A stretch of 64,000 nt of DNA, from positions 1-64,000 of the IMG/VR virus record IMGVR_UViG_3300046516_001816; one strand, given 5' to 3'. Both the position numbers and the translations under genes were made by a program. Below the pieces are notes generated by a model that searched no databases, was not told the origin of the DNA, and saw only the letters and a program-made list of their open reading frames with translations. Below are positions 7,804 through 58,605 of this stretch, piece by piece (position 1 is the stretch's first letter; the number at the start of each line of letters is the position of its first letter).

Positions 7804-8310
7804 TCACTGGCCCGGGGTTAAGCTCTGGGCCATAAAGGTATCGAAGTCCATTTGTGCCGCATCGCTGTCCATTTCACCGGGGACCACTTCGGGTTCGGGC
7901 AGGCCAACGGGTAACTGCGGTACAGCGCGACGTTCTTGAATCTGACCGTCGATCACCATCCCAGCTTGCATGGCACCCGGGGTCTGGAGGACCTGGGCAA
8001 TCAACGCTGCGGCCTGTGCCTGAGACGCACCGATCTTCTCATCGGTCTTCAGGCGTTTGCGACCGAGGGCGGCGCGGTCCATCCCGTCAAGCGCGGCCAG
8101 CACCACCATCTTGTCGCCCTTTTCCAGACTGTTCAGCTTCTCGCCGTCTTCCCCCATCATGGCGGTGACAATCTGCTGACGTTTCTTCTGGGTATAGGTA
8201 AGGACATGGTCCTCGCCTTCGATCACTTGCACAACAATTGGTGCGGCTTGATTTACACCAATCGTTTGAGGCGTGTGATCGTGTTGCGCTTCATCGTCGT
8301 CATAGTCCAT
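7804..8310 (-). CDS. Hypothetical protein
   Basis: GAGGTG precedes ATG 8310. Confidence 0.7.
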   Translation of the reverse strand: MDYDDDEAQHDHTPQTIGVNQAAPIVVQVIEGEDHVLTYTQKKRQQIVTAMMGEDGEKLNSLEKGDKMVVLAALDGMDRAALGRKRLKTDEKIGASQAQAAALIAQVLQTPGAMQAGMVIDGQIQERRAVPQLPVGLPEPEVVPGEMDSDAAQMDFDTFMAQSLTPGQ

Positions 8311-8421
8311 GACACACCTCGGTAGGCTAGATAGTTTGAGTAACATATCATTCTAATGAGCTTCTTCGCTGAATCTCACTTAAATCAAGCCAAAACGAAC
8401 GGTAAACGAATAGGAGTTGTG

Positions 8422-8958
8422 ATGAGAAAATGGATTCTACACTGGAAGGCCTGGTGGATGCGACGCCAGTACCTGAAAGTGCGCTTGCTCAACCCGAAGC
8501 TCACGGACCATCAAGCCGCCCGGGAAACGCTGGAAGCCTTGCTCGGTCATCTGAGCGAAGTGCCGTTCCAGCATTTTCACAAGGATGCGGTGATTGGCGT
8601 GGAGCTGAAAGTCTTCTACAAGACGATCGACGAGTATCGTCAGGAGATGAAAGCGCTCTCGGGCCGCTTGCTCAATGAACAAATGATCCAGACCGCCTGG
8701 GCTGACCAGACGGAAAAAGAAGTCGCCATGGACCGGTTCCTCACCTCCAAGGACGGCTTCTACCTGGACGTCGTCGACGCGATTCATGGATTCAAACATG
8801 AAGCGCTGGTGCTCTGTGCCCTCATGCAGAAAAGCGATCAAGCCAAGTTTGGCGTGCATGAACACAACCGCCGCATGCTGCTCAAGTTTATGGCTAACTT
8901 GCGCACGGTGACGGTGCACCTGATCGACACCAGCCACAGCCTGTCCCCACAGGCCTGA
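8422..8958 (+). CDS. Hypothetical protein
   Basis: AGGAG at 8412 precedes ATG 8422. Confidence 0.7.
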   Translation: MRKWILHWKAWWMRRQYLKVRLLNPKLTDHQAARETLEALLGHLSEVPFQHFHKDAVIGVELKVFYKTIDEYRQEMKALSGRLLNEQMIQTAWADQTEKEVAMDRFLTSKDGFYLDVVDAIHGFKHEALVLCALMQKSDQAKFGVHEHNRRMLLKFMANLRTVTVHLIDTSHSLSPQA

Positions 8959-9006: not shown

Positions 9007-9693
9007 ATGGCACGCAATCAGCTGATGCGTATCTTGAATCGCAAAGATAAAGGAGCGTCACGCGCGTATGGCGTCGGCGGCGTCCTCTCCCGTCTGTGGG
9101 CCCAGATGCTCACGGACTTGGATGTCAATGTAGCGCGCTGGAATGACTACATGCATTCATTTGTGACCGACCCCGGCAATGGGTATCCGCCTACCAAAAA
9201 CGGGCAGACCAGTGCACGCGGGAATCTCACTAAAGAATTCTCACGGCCTCAGATGACCTTTAAGGTCTTTATGAAGGCCCTGCGGTTCTTGAAAGTAATC
9301 CGTGTCGAGATTGCAATCAAATGTCATTACATGGATCGGCCGCCTAGCACGCACGGCACGGAAGTCAACTTTCGCGTCCCGTCCCAGCCTGCGACCACCT
9401 TCATGGAGGACATCAGTCGTCTGAACTCGCCGGAACCCGAGATTCCTCGATACAGTGAGGAAGAAGATGACGAATTCGTGCGAGACATGCTCTCGCTGCT
9501 GTCCAACCCTTTCATGTTCCCGTTCCCGGACGAGGACGTATCGGATCAGGACTTTGAAATCATCCGACCGCAATTTGGGACCACCTCCCAGCCGGCCGAG
9601 GACTTTGGAGGTAATCGTCTAGCACAGATTGCCTACAAGCAGTACCTGGCCGACAAACAACAAATGGAATTTGATCATGAAGAACGCTCCTGA
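9007..9693 (+). CDS. Conserved hypothetical protein with a basic N-terminal half and acidic tail
   Basis: AAGGA upstream; motif RGNLTKEFSRPQMTFKVFMKALRFL. Confidence 0.7.
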   Translation: MARNQLMRILNRKDKGASRAYGVGGVLSRLWAQMLTDLDVNVARWNDYMHSFVTDPGNGYPPTKNGQTSARGNLTKEFSRPQMTFKVFMKALRFLKVIRVEIAIKCHYMDRPPSTHGTEVNFRVPSQPATTFMEDISRLNSPEPEIPRYSEEEDDEFVRDMLSLLSNPFMFPFPDEDVSDQDFEIIRPQFGTTSQPAEDFGGNRLAQIAYKQYLADKQQMEFDHEERS

Positions 9694-49078: not shown

Positions 49079-49170
49079 CATCCTCATTGGAGAGTGCAGT
49101 GCACAGAATAAGGGGTAAATCTTATTCGGCATTAGAGCGCCTGCCACGAAAAGGTAGGGTTAGGTATGTC

Positions 49171-49680
49171 CTGGCCCCCGCCGAGCCCGCCTGCGCCCGC
49201 TGCGCGCCCCCCAGCCTGGTCCTCGCCCGCCCCGCGCCCCGGCCGCCGCCCGCCGCGCCCATTACGTTCTCATTTGGAGGTTTTCTTTACCATCCGGTAG
49301 ATCTTCTACCAACATTAAACCAGTCAGTGCTTTGCCGTTGTTTGCTTCGCCGTTAAGGCTTTGCTACCTAGAGGATGGGCCATCGAGCCCATCCGTCTAT
49401 ACATCTACTTCGATTTTTCCAAAAAGAAAACACTTCATGCAAGGGGTTGGTCGTTCTCCCCTGAGCTGGTCCTGTTGGGACCAGCGATCTTTTCATAGAC
49501 ACCAATATGTCATTCTAGTATTTTCTTACTGCATACTGGACATAGTTATGCATTGAGGTACTATAGAACAATAAGAAAAACAAGAGGTACCCTCAATACT
49601 TATATATGGGAAGTTATGGTTTTGGAAGAGGGGCCCATATTCTAGTAAAAGGGGGAGACCCCCTTTTACTCATATATAAG
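49171..49680. other. Non-coding divergence region: C-rich tract followed by AT-rich nested palindromes
   Basis: 49171-49260 is almost all C/G. Palindromes at 49552-49597, 49599-49608/49671-49680 and 49644-49670. Confidence 0.7.
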
Positions 49681-49763
49681 ACTGTCTACAGTTGGGGAGA
49701 AACCTTTACAAACTAACTTCAGACATATATCACCTACCTGATCCCCAATCACGGAGGTGCGAG

Positions 49764-53755: not shown

Positions 53756-54559
53756 TTAGCGATTGCCGCCGAGCATCAACCGCAACGTGCGCGTGTAGCG
53801 TTCCCGGTCGTTCATATACGCGACCTTGGTCCACTTGTCCCGCAGATGATCCTGGTAGTTCTGTTCGGCATCCGCGTAACCGTCGATGATGTCCTTGATC
53901 CGGCCAATCGTCTGACCCCCACGCAGTTCCCCGACATCCAGGTCAATCACGTAGTTGTTGTAGATATAGGACTTGACCGCGTACTCCACCAGCTTGGCAA
54001 AGACGTGGTAGCTGCGCAGCTGGATGTTGTTCAGGTTCTCATCGTTGGCGACGATACAGCGCAGGTATGCGTTGGCCGGCATCGTCATCACGTCTTCGAT
54101 CAGCACGATGTTCTCGCCAATCAAACTGATCCGGGCAGTGGAGGTTTGTGGAATCATCCCCATCGCATCCATCACGGCTTGTCCGGCTTGGAGCATCATG
54201 TTGTTCTGACCGTTCGCCGCGACCCCCGCAGCACTGATACGCGACGGATCGGCAAAGGACACGTTGAGCACCGACATGATGGACGCGCCATTGGTGCGAT
54301 CTTTCGGGATGCGGTAGACCGACTGGTACATCTCGTCGCCCCCGGTGCGCAGCCCATCCAGACAGATCCAGATCTCACGGCCTCCCACGAGGTTACAGTC
54401 GACCAACACGCGCGGCCGCATAACCAAGGCCATAATCTGCTCATCGACGCTCTTGGGCGTATCGCGCCAGCGCTCGGTGCGGTTCACAAAAACCGTATGC
54501 AGGATTTCCTTGGGAATCCGGAACTGCACTTCGGTGAGGGCTTTCGAAATTGGGTTCAC
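53756..54559 (-). CDS. Conserved phiKZ-like virion protein
   Basis: AGGAG with GTG start; motifs NPISKAL..V.FRIP.EIL and AVKSYIYN. Confidence 0.75.
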   Translation of the reverse strand: MNPISKALTEVQFRIPKEILHTVFVNRTERWRDTPKSVDEQIMALVMRPRVLVDCNLVGGREIWICLDGLRTGGDEMYQSVYRIPKDRTNGASIMSVLNVSFADPSRISAAGVAANGQNNMMLQAGQAVMDAMGMIPQTSTARISLIGENIVLIEDVMTMPANAYLRCIVANDENLNNIQLRSYHVFAKLVEYAVKSYIYNNYVIDLDVGELRGGQTIGRIKDIIDGYADAEQNYQDHLRDKWTKVAYMNDRERYTRTLRLMLGGNR

Positions 54560-54640
54560 ACTGGACTCCTAAAAAATTCGGTGATATATCATATTCTTGA
54601 GTCGCCTATCAAATGATTTCGATTTACAAGGAGCTAAACC

Positions 54641-54838
54641 ATGGGTCAAGTTATTCCGTTTACGGCACGCCGGGCTGCCCAGCGCGTAGCTGAACAAAAA
54701 CAGAAGCGTGATGCGGAGCTTGCTCCTGTCATGCAAGCACTGCGCGATAAGGACGCCGGCGCATTTGAAATTGCACTGAAAGAATGCCTCGGACTGGATA
54801 TGTTTGATATGGCCCAAAGTGCGCTGCGGAACAGTTAA
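54641..54838 (+). CDS. Small hypothetical protein
   Basis: AAGGAG upstream; ATATATCA motif at 54584. Confidence 0.7.
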   Translation: MGQVIPFTARRAAQRVAEQKQKRDAELAPVMQALRDKDAGAFEIALKECLGLDMFDMAQSALRNS

Positions 54839-54917: not shown

Positions 54918-55913
54918 ATGACGACTCATGAACGTGAGCGCGGTCGCGTGCGGTTGTATGCATGCGGTGGCGCTGGCATCAACATGGGCAGCAAGCTCGC
55001 GCACTTCAAGAACGAACCCAGCGAAGCTTACGCCCAGCTCGACACGGTTTACGTCGACACCTCTAAGTCCAACCTCCATGCGAAGATCGATGCGGAATCG
55101 ATCTATCTGATCGACGGCCTCGACGGCTCCGGTCAAGTGCGCAAGGAAAACTACGGCGCGATTTCCGAACGCGTGCGGGATATCCTGCAAACGTTCAAGC
55201 CCGTGGACCTGAACCTGATGCTGCATTCGCTCTCCGGCGGCAGCGGCTCCGTGATCGCCCCATCGATTGTCTCGGAACTGCTCTCGAAGGATCTGCCGAC
55301 CATCGTCATCTGCGTGGGTGACGACTCGACGAAGAAATTCGCCGAGAACACGCTCAATACGCTGAAGTCGTACGAGCAGATCGCGAAGCTGCGCAAGGCG
55401 CCGGTGTTGATGTACTATCTGCAAAACGGCCCCGACATGCCGCGTGCGAAGATCGACGAGCGGGTGCAGGCGCTGGTCGCCTCGCTATGCATGCTGTTCT
55501 CGCGTCGCAACCGTGAGCTCGACAGCAAAGACCTGTACAACTGGGTGAACTACCCGAATGTCACGTCGCATGCACCGGGCCTCACGGCACTCACGCTGGT
55601 TACGTCGCTCAACCCAGCTACGCTCGGCACGCTGGGCAACCTGATCTCGATCGCCACCCTCACCAAGGGTGATGTCGACCCGACGCTCTCGATTCGCCCC
55701 GAAGTGCAGTACGTGGGCTACGTCGACGATACGCTCGGCGGCGACTTCAAGGCGCCGTATCATTACGTTACCTCCGATGGTGTCTTCGGCGACGTCGCGG
55801 CGCACCTCAATGGCGTGCTGCGCGAACTCGACGACCAATCGGCAGCTCGCCTGAAAAAGGGCGGCATCAGCACCGGTGCGGACCAGGTCACTGATTCCGG
55901 CATGGTGTTGTAA
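54918..55913 (+). CDS. phuZ: Phage tubulin PhuZ
   Basis: Motifs ACGGAGIN, VDTS.SN, DGSG..R, tubulin signature SGGSGS, ELD..D, and C-terminal DSGMVL. Confidence 0.95.
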   Translation: MTTHERERGRVRLYACGGAGINMGSKLAHFKNEPSEAYAQLDTVYVDTSKSNLHAKIDAESIYLIDGLDGSGQVRKENYGAISERVRDILQTFKPVDLNLMLHSLSGGSGSVIAPSIVSELLSKDLPTIVICVGDDSTKKFAENTLNTLKSYEQIAKLRKAPVLMYYLQNGPDMPRAKIDERVQALVASLCMLFSRRNRELDSKDLYNWVNYPNVTSHAPGLTALTLVTSLNPATLGTLGNLISIATLTKGDVDPTLSIRPEVQYVGYVDDTLGGDFKAPYHYVTSDGVFGDVAAHLNGVLRELDDQSAARLKKGGISTGADQVTDSGMVL

Positions 55914-55917
55914 CTGG

Positions 55918-56505
55918 CTTAAGGACATCTTCAGGCTATGGGAGACCGTAGCCTGGAAAGTGTTCTTAGGTAACAAGGTTCTCTCGGAAAGGGCCGCAGC
56001 GTCGCGTCGTTGCGTACCCGTCTCTAGACCTGTCACGCGCCTAACCGTTGGGGATACCGCCGTAAAGAGGATACGGTATGGACCCCCAACTGACAGGCTT
56101 ACCGAGACATCCGAGAGCTACCTGTCAGTTCTTCCACCTACAACGAACAAATACAAGCCTGCTTCTTAGTGGGTTGATCATAGCGGTCTGACCAATGTCG
56201 AGACTTGAGTTCCGTTTACCGGGTTGATCGCCTGGACCGGTTCCGAATGAGGACAGAGGGTTACTGATACATGTCGGGGAGAAGACCAGTATAAGTCCGG
56301 AGTAGCTTCTGGGGATAGGTCTCGGTGTATCCGCATCGCGCGCGATCGTAAGGTCAGGAAGACCAAATCTATTTGCCAGCGTCCAGGATCGGGAAACCGA
56401 GGAGACGTTTGTGGCCCAACCATGCAATTGCGGCTGGTTTGGAATACCTACAAAACGGGGTAGGCATTCGAAAGCAGCTGCGGGTAGTAATGCGAGTGAG
56501 ACCAA
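55918..56505 (+). ncRNA. Candidate structured ncRNA or long UTR (region A)
   Basis: Many nested inverted repeats and no credible ORF. Confidence 0.55.
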
Positions 56506-56510
56506 TCATC

Positions 56511-56990
56511 ATGCATAAAAGACCTACCAAAATCATCGTCCTGCGACACGCAGAGAAACCGATCGATCCGATCGACCAGCGCTTAGCGCATCGCGGATAT
56601 AAACGGGCTGAGTACTTGGCGGAGTTCATTCCGAAGAACTTCGGGCGACCGAGCATGATCTTCGCGACCGAACCCACCAAGAGCAGCTTCCGACCGTTTC
56701 TGACGATGCAACCATTATGGGATGCAGTAAAAGAATCCTGGATGGATGTATCGATTGACGATGAGGCCGCTTTACACCTCGGGCACAAGTTGCGCGCAGG
56801 AGACCTCTCAGTTGGCGAAAACGTCGTCGTCTGCTGGCACCATGGCAAGATCCCGGAATTGATGAAGGGGCTCGGGTGCAGCGTGCACGACTACCCGGCG
56901 AAGTGGCCGGATAACGATTACAGCACCATCTACGTCGTGACCTATGAAAAGGGCGAGGCGGTGGTGTCCCAGTATAAACAGCTCTTCTAG
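56511..56990 (+). CDS. Histidine phosphatase superfamily protein (SixA/PGM-like)
   Basis: Motifs [30 protein letters not shown]. Confidence 0.85.
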
Positions 56991-56998
56991 GATTCGCA

Positions 56999-57241
56999 GT
57001 GGAAAACATCGAACAACAAGTCAAGCGCATCGTCGCTGCGCAACTCGGTCTGGAAGTGGCTGACATCAAGAACGACAGCCATATCACGCACGACCTCGGC
57101 GCGGACTCGCTCGACAAGATCGAACTCGTGATGGCGCTCGAAGACGATTTCAAGCTGGACATTCGCGACGAGGATGAAGAAAAGCTCCTCACCGTGCAGA
57201 ACATCATCGACTACGTGTCGGCCGAAAAGGCCAACGCGTAG
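56999..57241 (+). CDS. acpP: Acyl carrier protein
   Basis: 80 aa, acidic; phosphopantetheine motif [20 protein letters not shown]; TVQ..IDY. Confidence 0.95.
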
Positions 57242-57250
57242 CAGTCTTTT

Positions 57251-58144
57251 TCGGCGCGCGCCGGACGACTGGTAAGTGCGGGATACAGACCGCGCTCACC
57301 GGGGGCTCTCGTGATTCAATCAAGATCTTCTCCCGTTATAGGGACGTCCATCTTGGCGGGCGACGCGGCTTGCATACCCGCGTCGTAACCCGCGCGTGCG
57401 CGCGCCGACGGGTGAGCGTCAATCGGTGCAGTATCTAGATGTTGGTTTGTTTAGGTATTTCGGTTGACTCTTTGGAAAAGCGGCTCTTTGAAAAAGCGGT
57501 TTGGCTGACTTCGATCTCGGGCGTGGGAACCTGGGGTGGACGGGCACTCATTGACCGACTGGCGCTCACCGCTACTCGCCCTGCCTTTCGCAGGGCGCAT
57601 CTGGGCCCAATGTACACCAGCTCTTGTCGCTCGCCGCGGGCTTACATTTTTGGCGATTTGGATTCACCGCGGCTGGCGGGGGCAACAATAACGTACATTG
57701 AGGAAGATTGGCCACGACCCATTGGCCCCATCAACGCTACGGGCGCGAGAACGCGAAAGAGTACAGGTGTCAAAATGAAATAGGTTTAGCCCAGCGCACT
57801 TTTTCATGATCCCAAACCGCAAGGACTAACGGCACGCTTGGCGCCTGCCGGAAGCACGCGGGAGAGGGACGGCGATACCATTCCTATGAGTAATGGCTCT
57901 TTTTAAAGAGTCCGACGTACGAGACCCGTCCACGGGCATTACGGAGCCAAGCGGAGCTGCCTGCGCGATCTACGCATCGCCAATAGGAGTGACCGCCTAC
58001 CTGCTGTAAGCGTGAGTCTCACTGAAGTCGAGATAGGACCGCAACTGCTCAGCGTGGGAAATATAGAGCACACCCGGAAGGGCTTCCAGGATCGTGAGCG
58101 CGAGCCACGAAGCGAAGCCCTTCCCCCTTCTTTCTTTTATGCCG
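57251..58144 (+). ncRNA. Candidate large multi-domain structured ncRNA (region B, about 900 nt)
   Basis: At least four long-range closing helices; ends in a terminator + TTATGCCG; no credible ORF. Confidence 0.6.
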
Positions 58145-58230: not shown

Positions 58231-58605
58231 ATGCATAGACAAGCGGTTCTGGTCCAAGACATCGGGCAGTTGCGTTCCATGCTGGACCCGGTGATCTGTT
58301 CTGTTCTGGAACCCTTTATCTATGTCGGCTTGACATTGGAGGGGGTGATCGAATGGATCATCAAGGAAGAGCTGTGGAAGGCCTATCAGTTTCCGATTGA
58401 CAACCATTTCCCCAAACAAAACCCGCATCGTGAGTTCTACAATCTTGTTAAAAGCAAGATGGAACACCCGACGTTGGAACAAGTCGTTCAGCATTTCGTT
58501 CGTGTCCCCAAGTTATACGGCGACAATTTGGCCGTTGTCGCTGTGAAAGGACGGAATCTGTACATTCATTATTACTTAAACCAACAACTCCAATACCCAA
58601 CATGA
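58231..58605 (+). CDS. Hypothetical protein (paralog array member)
   Basis: AAGGAG upstream; C-terminal KGRNLYI. Confidence 0.72.
   Translation: MHRQAVLVQDIGQLRSMLDPVICSVLEPFIYVGLTLEGVIEWIIKEELWKAYQFPIDNHFPKQNPHREFYNLVKSKMEHPTLEQVVQHFVRVPKLYGDNLAVVAVKGRNLYIHYYLNQQLQYPT

What the first reader, a model, noticed from the sequence alone, without database searches (positions are those of the whole stretch)
54918..58144. Candidate new system: phuZ - structured RNA - His phosphatase - ACP - large structured RNA
A two-gene metabolic cassette (histidine phosphatase with acpP 8 nt downstream) is sandwiched between two large structured non-coding regions. I see no hairpin+TATGCCG signal between the phuZ stop and 58137, so it may all be one transcript. 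Both RNAs share a design in which a central arm is flanked by two copies of its complement (CCTGTCA x2 around TGACAGG; GCGCTCACC at 57292 and 57562 around GGTGAGCG at 57411). Inference: a co-regulated RNA-protein module acting on host lipid or stringent-response physiology (host ACP is known to interact with SpoT and to be a cofactor for several toxins), or on phage compartment membranes.
Basis: inference. Interest (0 to 1): 0.8.

Follow-up and report, generated by a model that had tools for sequence, protein, structure and literature searches.

The report
Two new large phage RNAs flanking ACP
Two long gene-free stretches next to the tubulin gene of an uncultivated jumbo phage are conserved, intricately folded RNAs of two previously undescribed families that always accompany a phage acyl carrier protein gene. 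Large structured RNAs are rare, and what these two do is unknown.

Summary
The sequence facts hold. phuZ (54918-55913) is followed by a 597-nt ORF-free stretch (ncA, 55914-56510). Then come a SixA-like histidine phosphatase (56511-56990), an acyl carrier protein (ACP; 56999-57241) and a ~900-nt ORF-free stretch (ncB, 57242-58137).

Both stretches are real structured RNAs on the + strand:
- They are conserved in 12 phage lineages.
- They show no codon periodicity.
- 90-94% of predicted pairs are kept, against 34-47% in slid controls, with many compensatory changes.
- G-U pairs far outnumber A-C mismatches.

Neither RNA matches any Rfam 15 family. Sequence search finds neither in GenBank phages, and domain models find neither in five cultured relatives.

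A promoter-like TATATCAT lies at 54585. The first hairpin+T-run+TATGCCG signal comes at the end of ncB. Together these fit one phuZ-to-ncB transcript, but that is an inference.

The proposed four-part module is only partly right. ncA, ACP and ncB always occur together. The phosphatase is optional: two lineages lack it, one has it twice, and one has it alone. The "arm flanked by two complements" design is not conserved; only the downstream pairing is.

Both RNAs carry an invariant hairpin with a CAGGA/RGN internal loop, which suggests a shared partner. Function is unknown. My best guess is that they are stable RNA or RNA-protein scaffolds, with cis-acting UTRs of the ACP cassette as the main rival.

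The parts
54585..54592 (+). Promoter-like TATATCAT, the probable start of the phuZ transcription unit. A mirrored copy on the - strand faces the divergent DUF7484 gene.
   Evidence: TATATYAY occurs 24 times in the genome, and 14 copies are intergenic although only 9.4% of the genome is non-coding. The block is conserved in relatives, including FLC9. It resembles the phiKZ predicted promoter TATATTAC (PMC7058600, Table 2).
54641..54838 (+). Small ORF (65 aa) of unknown function, upstream of phuZ.
   Evidence: It has a positive codon-usage score. It has no Pfam or PHROG hit.
54918..55913 (+). phuZ, the phage tubulin gene.
   Evidence: Pfam Tubulin plus TubZ_C_2. It is 43% identical to the FLC9 homologue and 36-40% identical to annotated PhuZ/tubulin in RTH11, RSL2 and RP12.
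55914..56510 (+). ncA, a structured non-coding RNA of about 560-600 nt from an undescribed family.
   Evidence: RNAalifold predicts 82 pairs, 41 of them with compensatory changes. My full-length analysis gives 126 pairs, 89% paired and 65 covarying, against 17-30 in slid controls. G-U pairs number 119 against 27 A-C. There is no codon periodicity. No Rfam hit at E<=10.
55930..55957 (+). The 5' hairpin of ncA, directly after the phuZ stop codon.
   Evidence: The outer helix 55918-55927/55961-55970 covaries.
   Evidence: Pairs at columns 223-232/270-279 are kept through several pair types in 8 lineages. The downstream complement is found in most lineages.
56333..56507 (+). The ncA 3' domain (model R1), running up to the phosphatase Shine-Dalgarno sequence. 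It is roughly 95% identical between the window and L001 over about 130 nt by eye from the alignment, while flanking genes are about 70% identical.
   Evidence: Across 12 lineages 90% of pairs are kept against 34-47% when slid, and 17 pairs show compensatory change.
56381..56406 (+). The ncA copy of the shared hairpin with a 5'-CAGGA / 3'-RGN internal loop.
   Evidence: The loop is invariant and the stems covary in 12 lineages. The ncB model R2 also hits this site (E 0.036).
56432..56479 (+). Long conserved hairpin of ncA (19-21 bp).
   Evidence: Helix 4, with 9 pairs showing compensatory changes.
56511..56990 (+). SixA-like histidine phosphatase (159 aa), an optional cargo gene.
   Evidence: It is absent in L054 and L057, doubled in L055, and stands alone in L056.
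56999..57241 (+). Acyl carrier protein (80 aa) with a conserved phosphopantetheine-attachment serine. It is always present together with ncA and ncB.
   Evidence: It is the only PP-binding gene in the genome, and the phage has no PPTase gene.
57242..58137 (+). ncB, a structured non-coding RNA of about 810-900 nt from an undescribed family. Its 5' domain spans about 57250-57700 and its 3' domain about 57700-58125.
   Evidence: RNAalifold predicts 82 pairs, 37 of them compensatory. The full-length analysis gives 162 pairs and 72 covarying, against 26-39 when slid. G-U pairs number 150 against 51 A-C. There is no codon periodicity. No credible Rfam hit. L055 keeps only the 3' half.
58075..58125 (+). 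Terminal hairpin of ncB carrying the CAGGA/RGN internal loop. It also serves as the hairpin of the hairpin+T-run+TATGCCG signal.
   Evidence: Helices 4 and 5 of R2 are 98-100% paired, with 10 pairs compensatory in 10 lineages.
58126..58144 (+). T-rich run followed by TATGCCG. This is the probable terminator tail and the start signal of the next transcription unit.
   Evidence: It matches the genome-wide hairpin+yyTATGCCG pattern. It sits in the same place after ncB in L003, L012 and L013.

Best explanation
Shown: the two ORF-free stretches flanking the phosphatase-ACP genes are two distinct, conserved, highly structured RNAs read from the + strand. ncA is about 0.6 kb and ncB about 0.9 kb. They belong to no described RNA family. 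They are confined to one clade of nucleus-forming jumbo phages whose relatives turn up in Paraburkholderia and Caballeronia assemblies. They always occur together with a phage ACP gene that lies between them, while the other genes between them vary. Both RNAs contain the same invariant hairpin with a CAGGA/RGN internal loop.

Inferred: the stretch from a TATATCAT promoter at 54585 to the ncB terminal hairpin and T-run at about 58137 is one (probably early) transcript. It would carry the 65-aa ORF, phuZ, ncA, the phosphatase, the ACP and ncB. ncA and ncB would then be cut out or persist as stable folded RNAs. In L001 a tRNA starts exactly at the ncB 3' end, so RNase P could make that end.

Most likely mechanism (inference, not tested): ncA and ncB act as large RNA or RNA-protein scaffolds of the GOLLD/ROOL/OLE kind. 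They would dock one common partner through the shared CAGGA hairpin. Their work would be tied to the phage ACP, which must be primed by the host AcpS because the phage has no PPTase gene.
For: - Conservation and covariation: RNAalifold; pair counts with shuffled and slid controls; lineages not used to build the models keep the pairs; full length.
- Strand: G-U far outnumbers A-C.
- Non-coding: no 3-nt periodicity, with ratios of 1.04-1.05 against 2.0-2.7 in the neighbouring genes.
- No known family: Rfam at E<=10 on the window and at E<=1 on six relatives; no tRNA or tmRNA.
- Synteny and co-occurrence.
- Absence from five cultured relatives and from GenBank phages by blastn.
- Shared hairpin.
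- Transcription-unit signals.
- tRNA arrays abutting ncB.
- Size, many helices and long-range closing helices, as in other large ornate RNAs.
- The review PMC13282480 mentions only unspecified phiKZ non-coding RNAs and no such family.
Against: - There is no expression data. No RNA run could be listed, so the transcript, its ends and its stability are all inferred.
- No separate promoter or terminator sets ncA apart from the mRNAs. ncA ends at the phosphatase Shine-Dalgarno sequence. Both points fit a cis-acting leader equally well.
- The shared CAGGA hairpin is short and has no further copies in the genome, so a common partner is only a suggestion.
- The co-occurrence of the RNAs with the ACP may reflect a single gain in one clade. 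The PhuZ tree is unresolved at the base.
- Only 10-12 lineages are available. The helices in the central, variable parts differ between alignments.
Confidence: 0.5

Rival explanations
1. ncA and ncB are cis-acting untranslated regions of the ACP cassette. ncA would be a giant 5' leader, either a riboswitch-like sensor or a protein-bound translational operator. ncB would be a 3' trailer that stabilises, terminates or localises the mRNA. They would control when, where or how much ACP (and phosphatase) is made, and would not act in trans.
For: - They always bracket the ACP gene, and variable cargo genes lie only between them.
- ncA runs right up to the phosphatase Shine-Dalgarno sequence. An invariant CUC/GAG pairing may tie its 5' part to that region.
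- ncB ends in the operon's terminator-like hairpin.
- No internal promoter or terminator signal is seen.
Against: - At 0.6 and 0.9 kb each they are larger than the cis-regulators I know of (own knowledge).
- In L054 and L057 about 110 nt separate the R1-modelled ncA 3' domain from the ACP start.
- In L004, L029 and L007, extra sequence or ORFs separate the ACP from ncB.
- In L001 and L007, tRNA genes follow ncB in the same unit.
- The ncA 3' domain is conserved far above the level of the coding genes.
- No Rfam riboswitch or leader matches.
Confidence: 0.3
2. ncA and ncB are the 5' and 3' parts of one element, either a self-splicing intron-like ribozyme or a mobile RNA-bracketed cassette. The protein genes would sit in an internal loop as cargo.
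For: - The ends are constant while the cargo between them varies: ACP alone; phosphatase plus ACP; phosphatase plus ACP plus a 156-aa ORF; or two phosphatase-ACP pairs.
- All parts are absent together in FLC9, RTH11, SURPRISE13, RP12 and LucasX.
Against: - No group I or group II intron match at E<=10.
- No conserved or covarying intermolecular helix between ncA and ncB beyond a parallel-orientation control, 5 candidates against 3.
- The element lies between genes, not inside an exon.
- L055 keeps ncA but only the 3' half of ncB.
- No endonuclease, reverse transcriptase or transposase lies in or beside it.
Confidence: 0.07
3. The gaps are not functional RNAs. They would be decayed genes, or DNA-level elements such as an origin or a packaging or partition site for PhuZ-driven positioning.
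For: They sit next to phuZ, and no expression data are available.
Against: - Compensatory base-pair changes keep dozens of helices intact.
- The strand-specific excess of G-U over A-C is an RNA signature, not a DNA signature.
- There is no residual codon periodicity and no conserved ORF.
- There are no repeats or paralogues in the genome.
Confidence: 0.03

Closest known systems
GOLLD and ROOL RNAs (large ornate bacterial and phage RNAs; cryo-EM shows RNA-only multimeric complexes, bioRxiv 10.1101/2024.12.08.627333)
   Same: - They are very large (0.5-0.9 kb), richly structured non-coding RNAs of unknown function carried by phages.
- GOLLD and ROOL are often next to tRNA genes (own knowledge). 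ncB is directly followed by tRNA arrays in L001 and L007.
   Different: - No match to either Rfam model at E<=10.
- The hosts are different: a Burkholderiaceae jumbo-phage clade, as against mostly Firmicutes, Actinobacteria and rumen or lake metagenomes.
- There are two different RNAs in one operon, always with an ACP gene between them.
- Multimer formation was not tested.
OLE RNA (about 600 nt, in Firmicutes; membrane-associated RNP with OapA; sits in an operon with isoprenoid and lipid-related genes, own knowledge)
   Same: It is a large structured RNA embedded in a protein-coding operon linked to lipid-type metabolism, and it acts with dedicated proteins.
   Different: - No Rfam OLE match.
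- No oapA-like membrane protein gene was recognised beside it.
- The setting is a phage, not a bacterial chromosome.
Non-coding RNAs of phiKZ, and the stable RNAs in the phage T4 tRNA region
   Same: They are phage-encoded non-coding RNAs. The jumbo-phage review PMC13282480 notes that phiKZ expresses ncRNAs of unknown role. T4 has small stable RNAs beside its tRNA cluster (own knowledge).
   Different: Those are small RNAs with no reported large conserved fold. blastn found no similar sequence in any GenBank phage.
Phage auxiliary acyl carrier proteins (PHROG 5934)
   Same: The window ACP matches phrog_5934 (E 7e-22). ACP genes occur in other large phages such as BCSR5 and Bajun.
   Different: In those phages the ACP sits in dense gene arrays, with no flanking large RNAs and no phosphatase.

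Membership tests
Any Rfam 15 family (including GOLLD, ROOL, OLE, HEARO, raiA, group I/II introns, RNase P, tmRNA, SRP, 6S and riboswitches) | A match to the family's covariance model | tested here: not met
   cmscan of ncA and ncB alone at E<=10 gave no hit for ncA. For ncB it gave only a chance-level snoRNA hit (15.6 bits against a gathering score of 50). Six relatives' loci gave only tRNAs.
tmRNA / tRNA | A tRNA-like domain and tag reading frame detectable by ARAGORN or Rfam | tested here: not met
   ARAGORN found none in the window. There is no Rfam tmRNA hit. By my reading of the alignment, the A/C-rich stretch before the 56157-56174 hairpin has no consistent reading frame across lineages.
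GOLLD/ROOL-type ornate RNA (functional kind) | Homo-oligomeric RNA-only assembly | not testable with these tools
   This needs native gels or cryo-EM of in vitro transcripts.
GOLLD/ROOL-type ornate RNA (functional kind) | A large, covariation-supported multi-helix fold in a phage or prophage, often near tRNAs | tested here: met
   tRNA arrays lie after ncB in 2 of 12 lineages.
Riboswitch / cis-regulatory leader | A conserved aptamer directly upstream of the regulated ORF, with an expression platform that alternates with a terminator or Shine-Dalgarno-sequestering helix | tested here: inconclusive
   ncA abuts the Shine-Dalgarno sequence, and an invariant CUC/GAG long-range pairing is predicted. 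No alternative pairing is conserved, and there is no terminator between ncA and the ORF.
Histidine phosphatase superfamily, branch 1 (SixA-like) | An N-terminal RHG-type motif with the catalytic His, plus a conserved Arg and a second His | tested here: met
   R12-H13 (RHAEK), R61 and H110-H111 are invariant in 14 homologues.
Histidine phosphatase superfamily, branch 1 (SixA-like) | The fold, and a score above the family threshold | tested here: inconclusive
   The fold is met: the AF2 model has pLDDT 91, and the top Foldseek hits are SixA 2rfl (E 8e-8, probability 1.0). The Pfam His_Phos_1 threshold is not reached. The window protein has no hit, and distant homologues score 16.6-20.2 bits against a cut-off of 21.7. 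The profile against PDB SixA gives E 0.07.
Acyl carrier protein (PP-binding, AcpP-like) | A Pfam PP-binding score above cut-off and a conserved DSL serine for phosphopantetheine attachment | tested here: met
   It scores 43.6 bits against a cut-off of 20.8. LGADSLD is invariant in 12 sequences.
PhuZ (phage tubulin of nucleus-forming jumbo phages) | A tubulin/FtsZ GTPase domain plus the phage tubulin C-terminal domain, with homology to annotated PhuZ | tested here: met
   Tubulin scores 35.6 bits against a cut-off of 33. TubZ_C_2 scores 19 bits, below its cut-off of 27. It is 36-38% identical over 98% of its length to RefSeq 'tubulin PhuZ' of RSL2 and RP12.

The most novel reading that the evidence does not exclude
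ncA and ncB, with the phage ACP, form a dedicated RNA-protein machine. This would be either an RNA-scaffolded carrier-protein complex or GOLLD-like RNA cages that hold or position holo- or acyl-ACP. The shared CAGGA hairpins would be the docking sites. That would be a kind of RNA-ACP partnership not known in any system. It would give nucleus-forming phages an RNA-based way to handle acyl or phosphopantetheine chemistry or to capture host ACP partners.
Probability: 0.12. Interest if true: 0.92.

Novelty: new variant of a known kind. Interest (0 to 1): 0.76.

Why it matters
Large structured non-coding RNAs above about 500 nt are very few in bacteria and phages (own knowledge). Recent cryo-EM of three of them revealed unexpected RNA-only assemblies (bioRxiv 10.1101/2024.12.08.627333).

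Here are two more candidate families:
- They have solid covariation support.
- They sit in nucleus-forming jumbo phages, where no such RNA has been described. The 2026 review PMC13282480 lists none.
- They are strictly linked to a phage ACP gene.

Related phage genomes appear as contigs of roughly 220-286 kb (one search read a 219,538-bp Logan copy) in assemblies labelled Paraburkholderia sp. BCC1886 and P. adhaesiva, and as a 144-kb contig in one labelled Caballeronia arationis. That points to the host range. If those strains still carry the phage, the RNAs could be tested directly.

If the RNAs turn out to be only UTRs, they would be an unusually elaborate example of UTR control. That would still be notable, but less so.

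Tried and rejected
- **Known RNA families.** Rfam at permissive thresholds on the window and on relatives gave nothing. ARAGORN found no tRNA or tmRNA.
- **A tmRNA-like tag frame in ncA.** By my reading of the alignment, there is no consistent frame across lineages.
- **Paralogues or repeats in the phage's own genome.** None were found.
- **Homology between ncA and ncB.** Only the CAGGA hairpin is shared.
- **A k-turn reading of the CAGGA loop.** I rejected it by inspection, because the non-bulged strand lacks the required GA next to the outer stem in most lineages. A CsrA/RsmA site (A(N)GGA) is only a partial fit, so I left it as an idea.
- **Extra copies of the CAGGA hairpin in the genome.** There were 5 loose matches against 7.2 in shuffles, so there is no enrichment.
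- **Intermolecular ncA-ncB helices.** None exceeded background.
- **RNA-seq support.** No RNA run could be listed, and the only DNA run held 6% of the sampled words.
- **Pattern scans of GTDB genomes.** The ncA pattern gave 0 hits. The ncB hairpin pattern gave 10 hits in unrelated taxa. None of them shows the complementary flanks that form the outer stem in ncB. They lie in GC-rich, coding-looking sequence, and I estimate about 2-10 chance matches, so I judged them to be chance.
- **IMG/VR and JGI metagenome scans.** Apart from the window's own genome, only L001 and L029 turned up.
- **FLC9's 770-nt gap after phuZ.** It shows no similarity to ncA or ncB by nhmmer or by the covariance models.
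- **Loss versus gain of the RNAs in L056.** The PhuZ tree is unresolved at the base, so I draw no conclusion.
Full report
**Setting.** The window is the first 64 kb of a 284,983-bp single-contig virus record with 56.7% GC, rated complete by CheckV. Its PhuZ is 43% identical to that of Burkholderia phage FLC9, and 35-40% identical to those of Xanthomonas and Ralstonia jumbo phages. Closer PhuZ homologues (57-75% identity) come from metagenomes and from assemblies labelled Caballeronia arationis, Paraburkholderia sp. BCC1886 and Paraburkholderia adhaesiva. In the two Paraburkholderia assemblies the table lists longest contigs of 284-286 kb, the size of this phage; one search read a 219,538-bp Logan copy of the BCC1886 contig. 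The likely hosts are therefore Burkholderiaceae. This is inferred from the record names.

**Observation check.**
- The layout is as described: phuZ at 54918-55913, a 597-nt ORF-free stretch, a 159-aa ORF at 56511-56990, an 80-aa ORF at 56999-57241, and then 989 nt without a credible ORF up to the next gene at 58231.
- The ORF list offers a TTG start at 56373 for the first ORF. Homologues all begin at the position of the ATG at 56511, so that extension is spurious.
- The first ORF has no Pfam hit. Its family keeps an invariant RH...R...HH pattern. Its AlphaFold model (pLDDT 91.4) matches SixA phosphohistidine phosphatases first (2rfl, E 8e-8, probability 1.0), followed by other histidine phosphatases. 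'Histidine phosphatase' stands, but the substrate is unknown.
- The second ORF is a standard AcpP-type ACP. PP-binding scores 43.6 bits, it matches phrog_5934, and LGADSLD is invariant in 12 sequences.
- The genome has no other carrier protein and no phosphopantetheinyl transferase. Priming would therefore depend on the host enzyme (inference).

**The two gaps are structured RNAs.** Homologues of the phosphatase and of PhuZ led to syntenic DNA from 12 distinct lineages: the window, L001, L003, L004, L007, L008, L012, L013, L029, L054, L055 and L057. Both gaps align across these lineages. Blocks of near-identity alternate with variable stretches. By eye from the alignment, the 3' 130 nt of ncA is roughly 95% identical between the window and L001, while the flanking genes are about 70% identical.

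| Measure | ncA | ncB |
|---|---|---|
| RNAalifold pairs (with compensatory changes) | 82 (41) | 82 (37) |
| 3'-domain model on independent lineages, pairs kept | 90.2% (12 lineages) | 94.0% (10 lineages) |
| Same, with partners slid 1-3 columns | 34-47% | 42-47% |
| Same, pairs changed on both sides (slid control) | 17 (2-9) | 15 (2-7) |
| Full length: pairs, % paired, covarying (slid control) | 126, 89%, 65 (17-30) | 162, 82.5%, 72 (26-39) |
| G-U pairs against A-C mismatches | 119 against 27 | 150 against 51 |
| Variability by codon phase, max/other ratio | 1.04 | 1.05 |
| Single-sequence MFE z-score | -4.5 | -2.4 |

- The G-U excess places the RNA on the + strand and rules out a purely DNA-level element.
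- The codon-phase ratios compare with 1.97 for phuZ and 2.67 for the phosphatase gene, so neither gap is a hidden or decayed gene.

**Not a known family.**
- Rfam 15 gives no match for ncA at E<=10. For ncB it gives only a chance-level snoRNA match. Six relatives' loci yield only tRNAs.
- ARAGORN finds no tRNA or tmRNA in the window.
- blastn of the whole stretch against 50,697 GenBank phage records finds only the ACP core in two unrelated phages.
- Models R1 and R2 find nothing in the complete genomes of FLC9, RTH11, SURPRISE13, RP12 and LucasX. Apart from a 770-nt gap in FLC9, the regions downstream of phuZ in those phages are packed with genes and lack an annotated ACP.
- The 2026 jumbo-phage review mentions only that phiKZ expresses non-coding RNAs (PMC13282480).

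**Transcription unit (inference).**
- Two sequence signals recur in this genome. A GC hairpin followed by yyTATGCCGyc has 65 copies, mostly between genes. TATATCAY has 24 copies, 14 of them intergenic although only 9.4% of the genome is non-coding. The second resembles the promoter TATATTAC predicted for phiKZ (PMC7058600, Table 2).
- A conserved TATATCAT lies at 54585, in the divergent region before the 65-aa ORF and phuZ. It is kept in relatives, FLC9 included.
- The next hairpin+T-run+TATGCCG on the + strand is at 58075-58144, at the end of ncB. The same holds in L003, L012 and L013. In L001 the signal comes after eight tRNA genes that follow ncB. Only L008 has an extra TATGCCG after phuZ.
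- This fits one transcript from about 54590 to about 58137. The ncB terminal hairpin would double as its terminator. No RNA run could be listed, so this remains untested.

**What belongs together.** ncA, an ACP gene and ncB are present together in every lineage that has any of them, always in that order. The genes between the RNAs vary:

| Lineages | Content between ncA and ncB |
|---|---|
| L054, L057 | ACP only |
| Window and most others | phosphatase + ACP |
| L004, L029 | phosphatase + ACP + a 156-aa ORF |
| L055 | two phosphatase-ACP pairs; ncB reduced to its 3' half |

- L056 (P. adhaesiva assembly) has the phosphatase after phuZ, but no ACP and neither RNA.
- More distant phosphatases stand alone in other phage contigs.
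- ACPs of other large phages sit in dense gene arrays.
- The phosphatase is therefore an optional passenger, and the conserved core is RNA-ACP-RNA.
- The PhuZ tree does not resolve whether L056 lost the core or branched off before it was gained. The co-occurrence may rest on a single evolutionary event.

**Shared motif.**
- Both RNAs contain a hairpin whose 5' strand reads CAGGA and whose 3' strand reads RGN, across an internal loop between two short helices.
- The loop letters are invariant in 12 ncA and 10 ncB copies. The flanking helices change by compensatory substitutions.
- The ncB model finds the ncA copy on its own (E 0.036).
- The motif is not enriched elsewhere in the genome.
- It is not a canonical k-turn and is only a partial fit to a CsrA/RsmA site. 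That is my reading.
- It is the best pointer to a common partner or a common tertiary module.

The central arms do pair with the downstream complements, and this is kept by covariation. For ncB the upstream complement is seen in the window, plus one one-mismatch site far upstream in L007. For ncA an exact upstream copy occurs in the window, in L012 and at one distant site in L007. A switch between two alternative partners is therefore not a conserved feature.

**Mechanism.**
- Shown: two new structured RNAs, their strand, their synteny with the ACP, and the shared hairpin.
- Inferred: co-transcription with phuZ, and possible 3'-end formation by RNase P where a tRNA abuts ncB. In L001 the tRNA starts at 9642 and the ncB model match ends at 9643.
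- Most likely in my judgement (about 0.5): they persist as folded RNAs that act as scaffolds, alone or with proteins, in a process that involves the phage ACP.
- Main rival (about 0.3): they are giant cis-acting UTRs of the ACP cassette.
- An intron-like single element gets little support, because no intron model matches and no conserved ncA-ncB helix was found.
- A non-functional or DNA-level reading is contradicted by the covariation and the strand asymmetry.

**Verdict.** The finding is best described as two undescribed families of large structured RNAs in a clade of nucleus-forming jumbo phages, tied to a phage ACP. It is worth experimental follow-up.

Noticed in passing
window and whole genome; e.g. 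53198, 58138, 62429 (+); 45138, 34019 (-): A GC-rich hairpin followed directly by yyTATGCCGyc recurs 65 times, mostly between genes. Some copies are palindromic (CGGCATA-hairpin-TATGCCG) between convergent or divergent genes. It is probably a combined terminator and promoter signal, and FLC9 has it too.
   Followed up: partly
G000:C1:203184-205326 (outside the window): A 2.1-kb stretch has no ORF above 84 aa in a 57% GC genome. It begins with a TATATTAC promoter-like motif at 203254 and has no Rfam match. It may be a third large non-coding RNA region.
   Followed up: partly
G000:C1: 231613-232306, 232643-233374, 192082-192659, 75100-75625; window 49148-49748: Further ORF-free gaps of 0.5-0.7 kb appear in my rough gene map, and none has an Rfam hit. 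The one at 49148-49748 ends with a TATATCAC motif at 49726.
   Followed up: partly
L001:9642-10779; L007:6766-7046: tRNA arrays follow ncB directly: 8 genes in L001 and at least 3 in L007. In L001 the first tRNA starts at the last base of the ncB hairpin match. The window's own four tRNAs lie elsewhere, at 215.7-216.8 kb.
   Followed up: yes
L054, L055, L056 (NCBI/Logan assemblies): Close relatives of this phage sit as separate contigs in assemblies labelled Paraburkholderia sp. BCC1886 and P. adhaesiva (longest contigs listed as 284-286 kb; the BCC1886 copy read was 219,538 bp) and Caballeronia arationis (144 kb). This points to the host range and possibly to a carrier state.
   Followed up: partly
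L019:6994-7763 (Burkholderia phage FLC9): FLC9 has a 770-nt unannotated gap right after phuZ, ending in a hairpin plus TTTTTTTATGCCG. It is unrelated in sequence to ncA and ncB. It may be another RNA in the same slot.
   Followed up: partly
L055:6577-8147 and 8192-8692: The phosphatase-ACP pair is duplicated in tandem, with copies 34-39% and 38-47% identical to the window proteins. ncB lacks its 5' domain in this lineage, which shows that the two ncB domains are separable.
   Followed up: partly
L004:2438-2908; L029:1772-1830: An extra 156-aa ORF of unknown function lies between the ACP and ncB in L004, with no Pfam hit. L029 matches only its first ~60 nt (93% identical) before the held locus ends.
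   Followed up: partly
window 54581-54592: The TATATCAT promoter-like motif before phuZ overlaps a mirrored TATATCAC on the other strand, facing the divergent DUF7484 gene (53756-54559). A second such back-to-back pair lies at 84022/84026.
   Followed up: no
window 56352-56364: A small ncA hairpin reads GGUC-AGGAA-GACC in eight lineages and GUUCAGUGAG... in the four most distant ones. Its GGA-containing loop resembles CsrA/Rsm-type binding hairpins (own knowledge).
   Followed up: no
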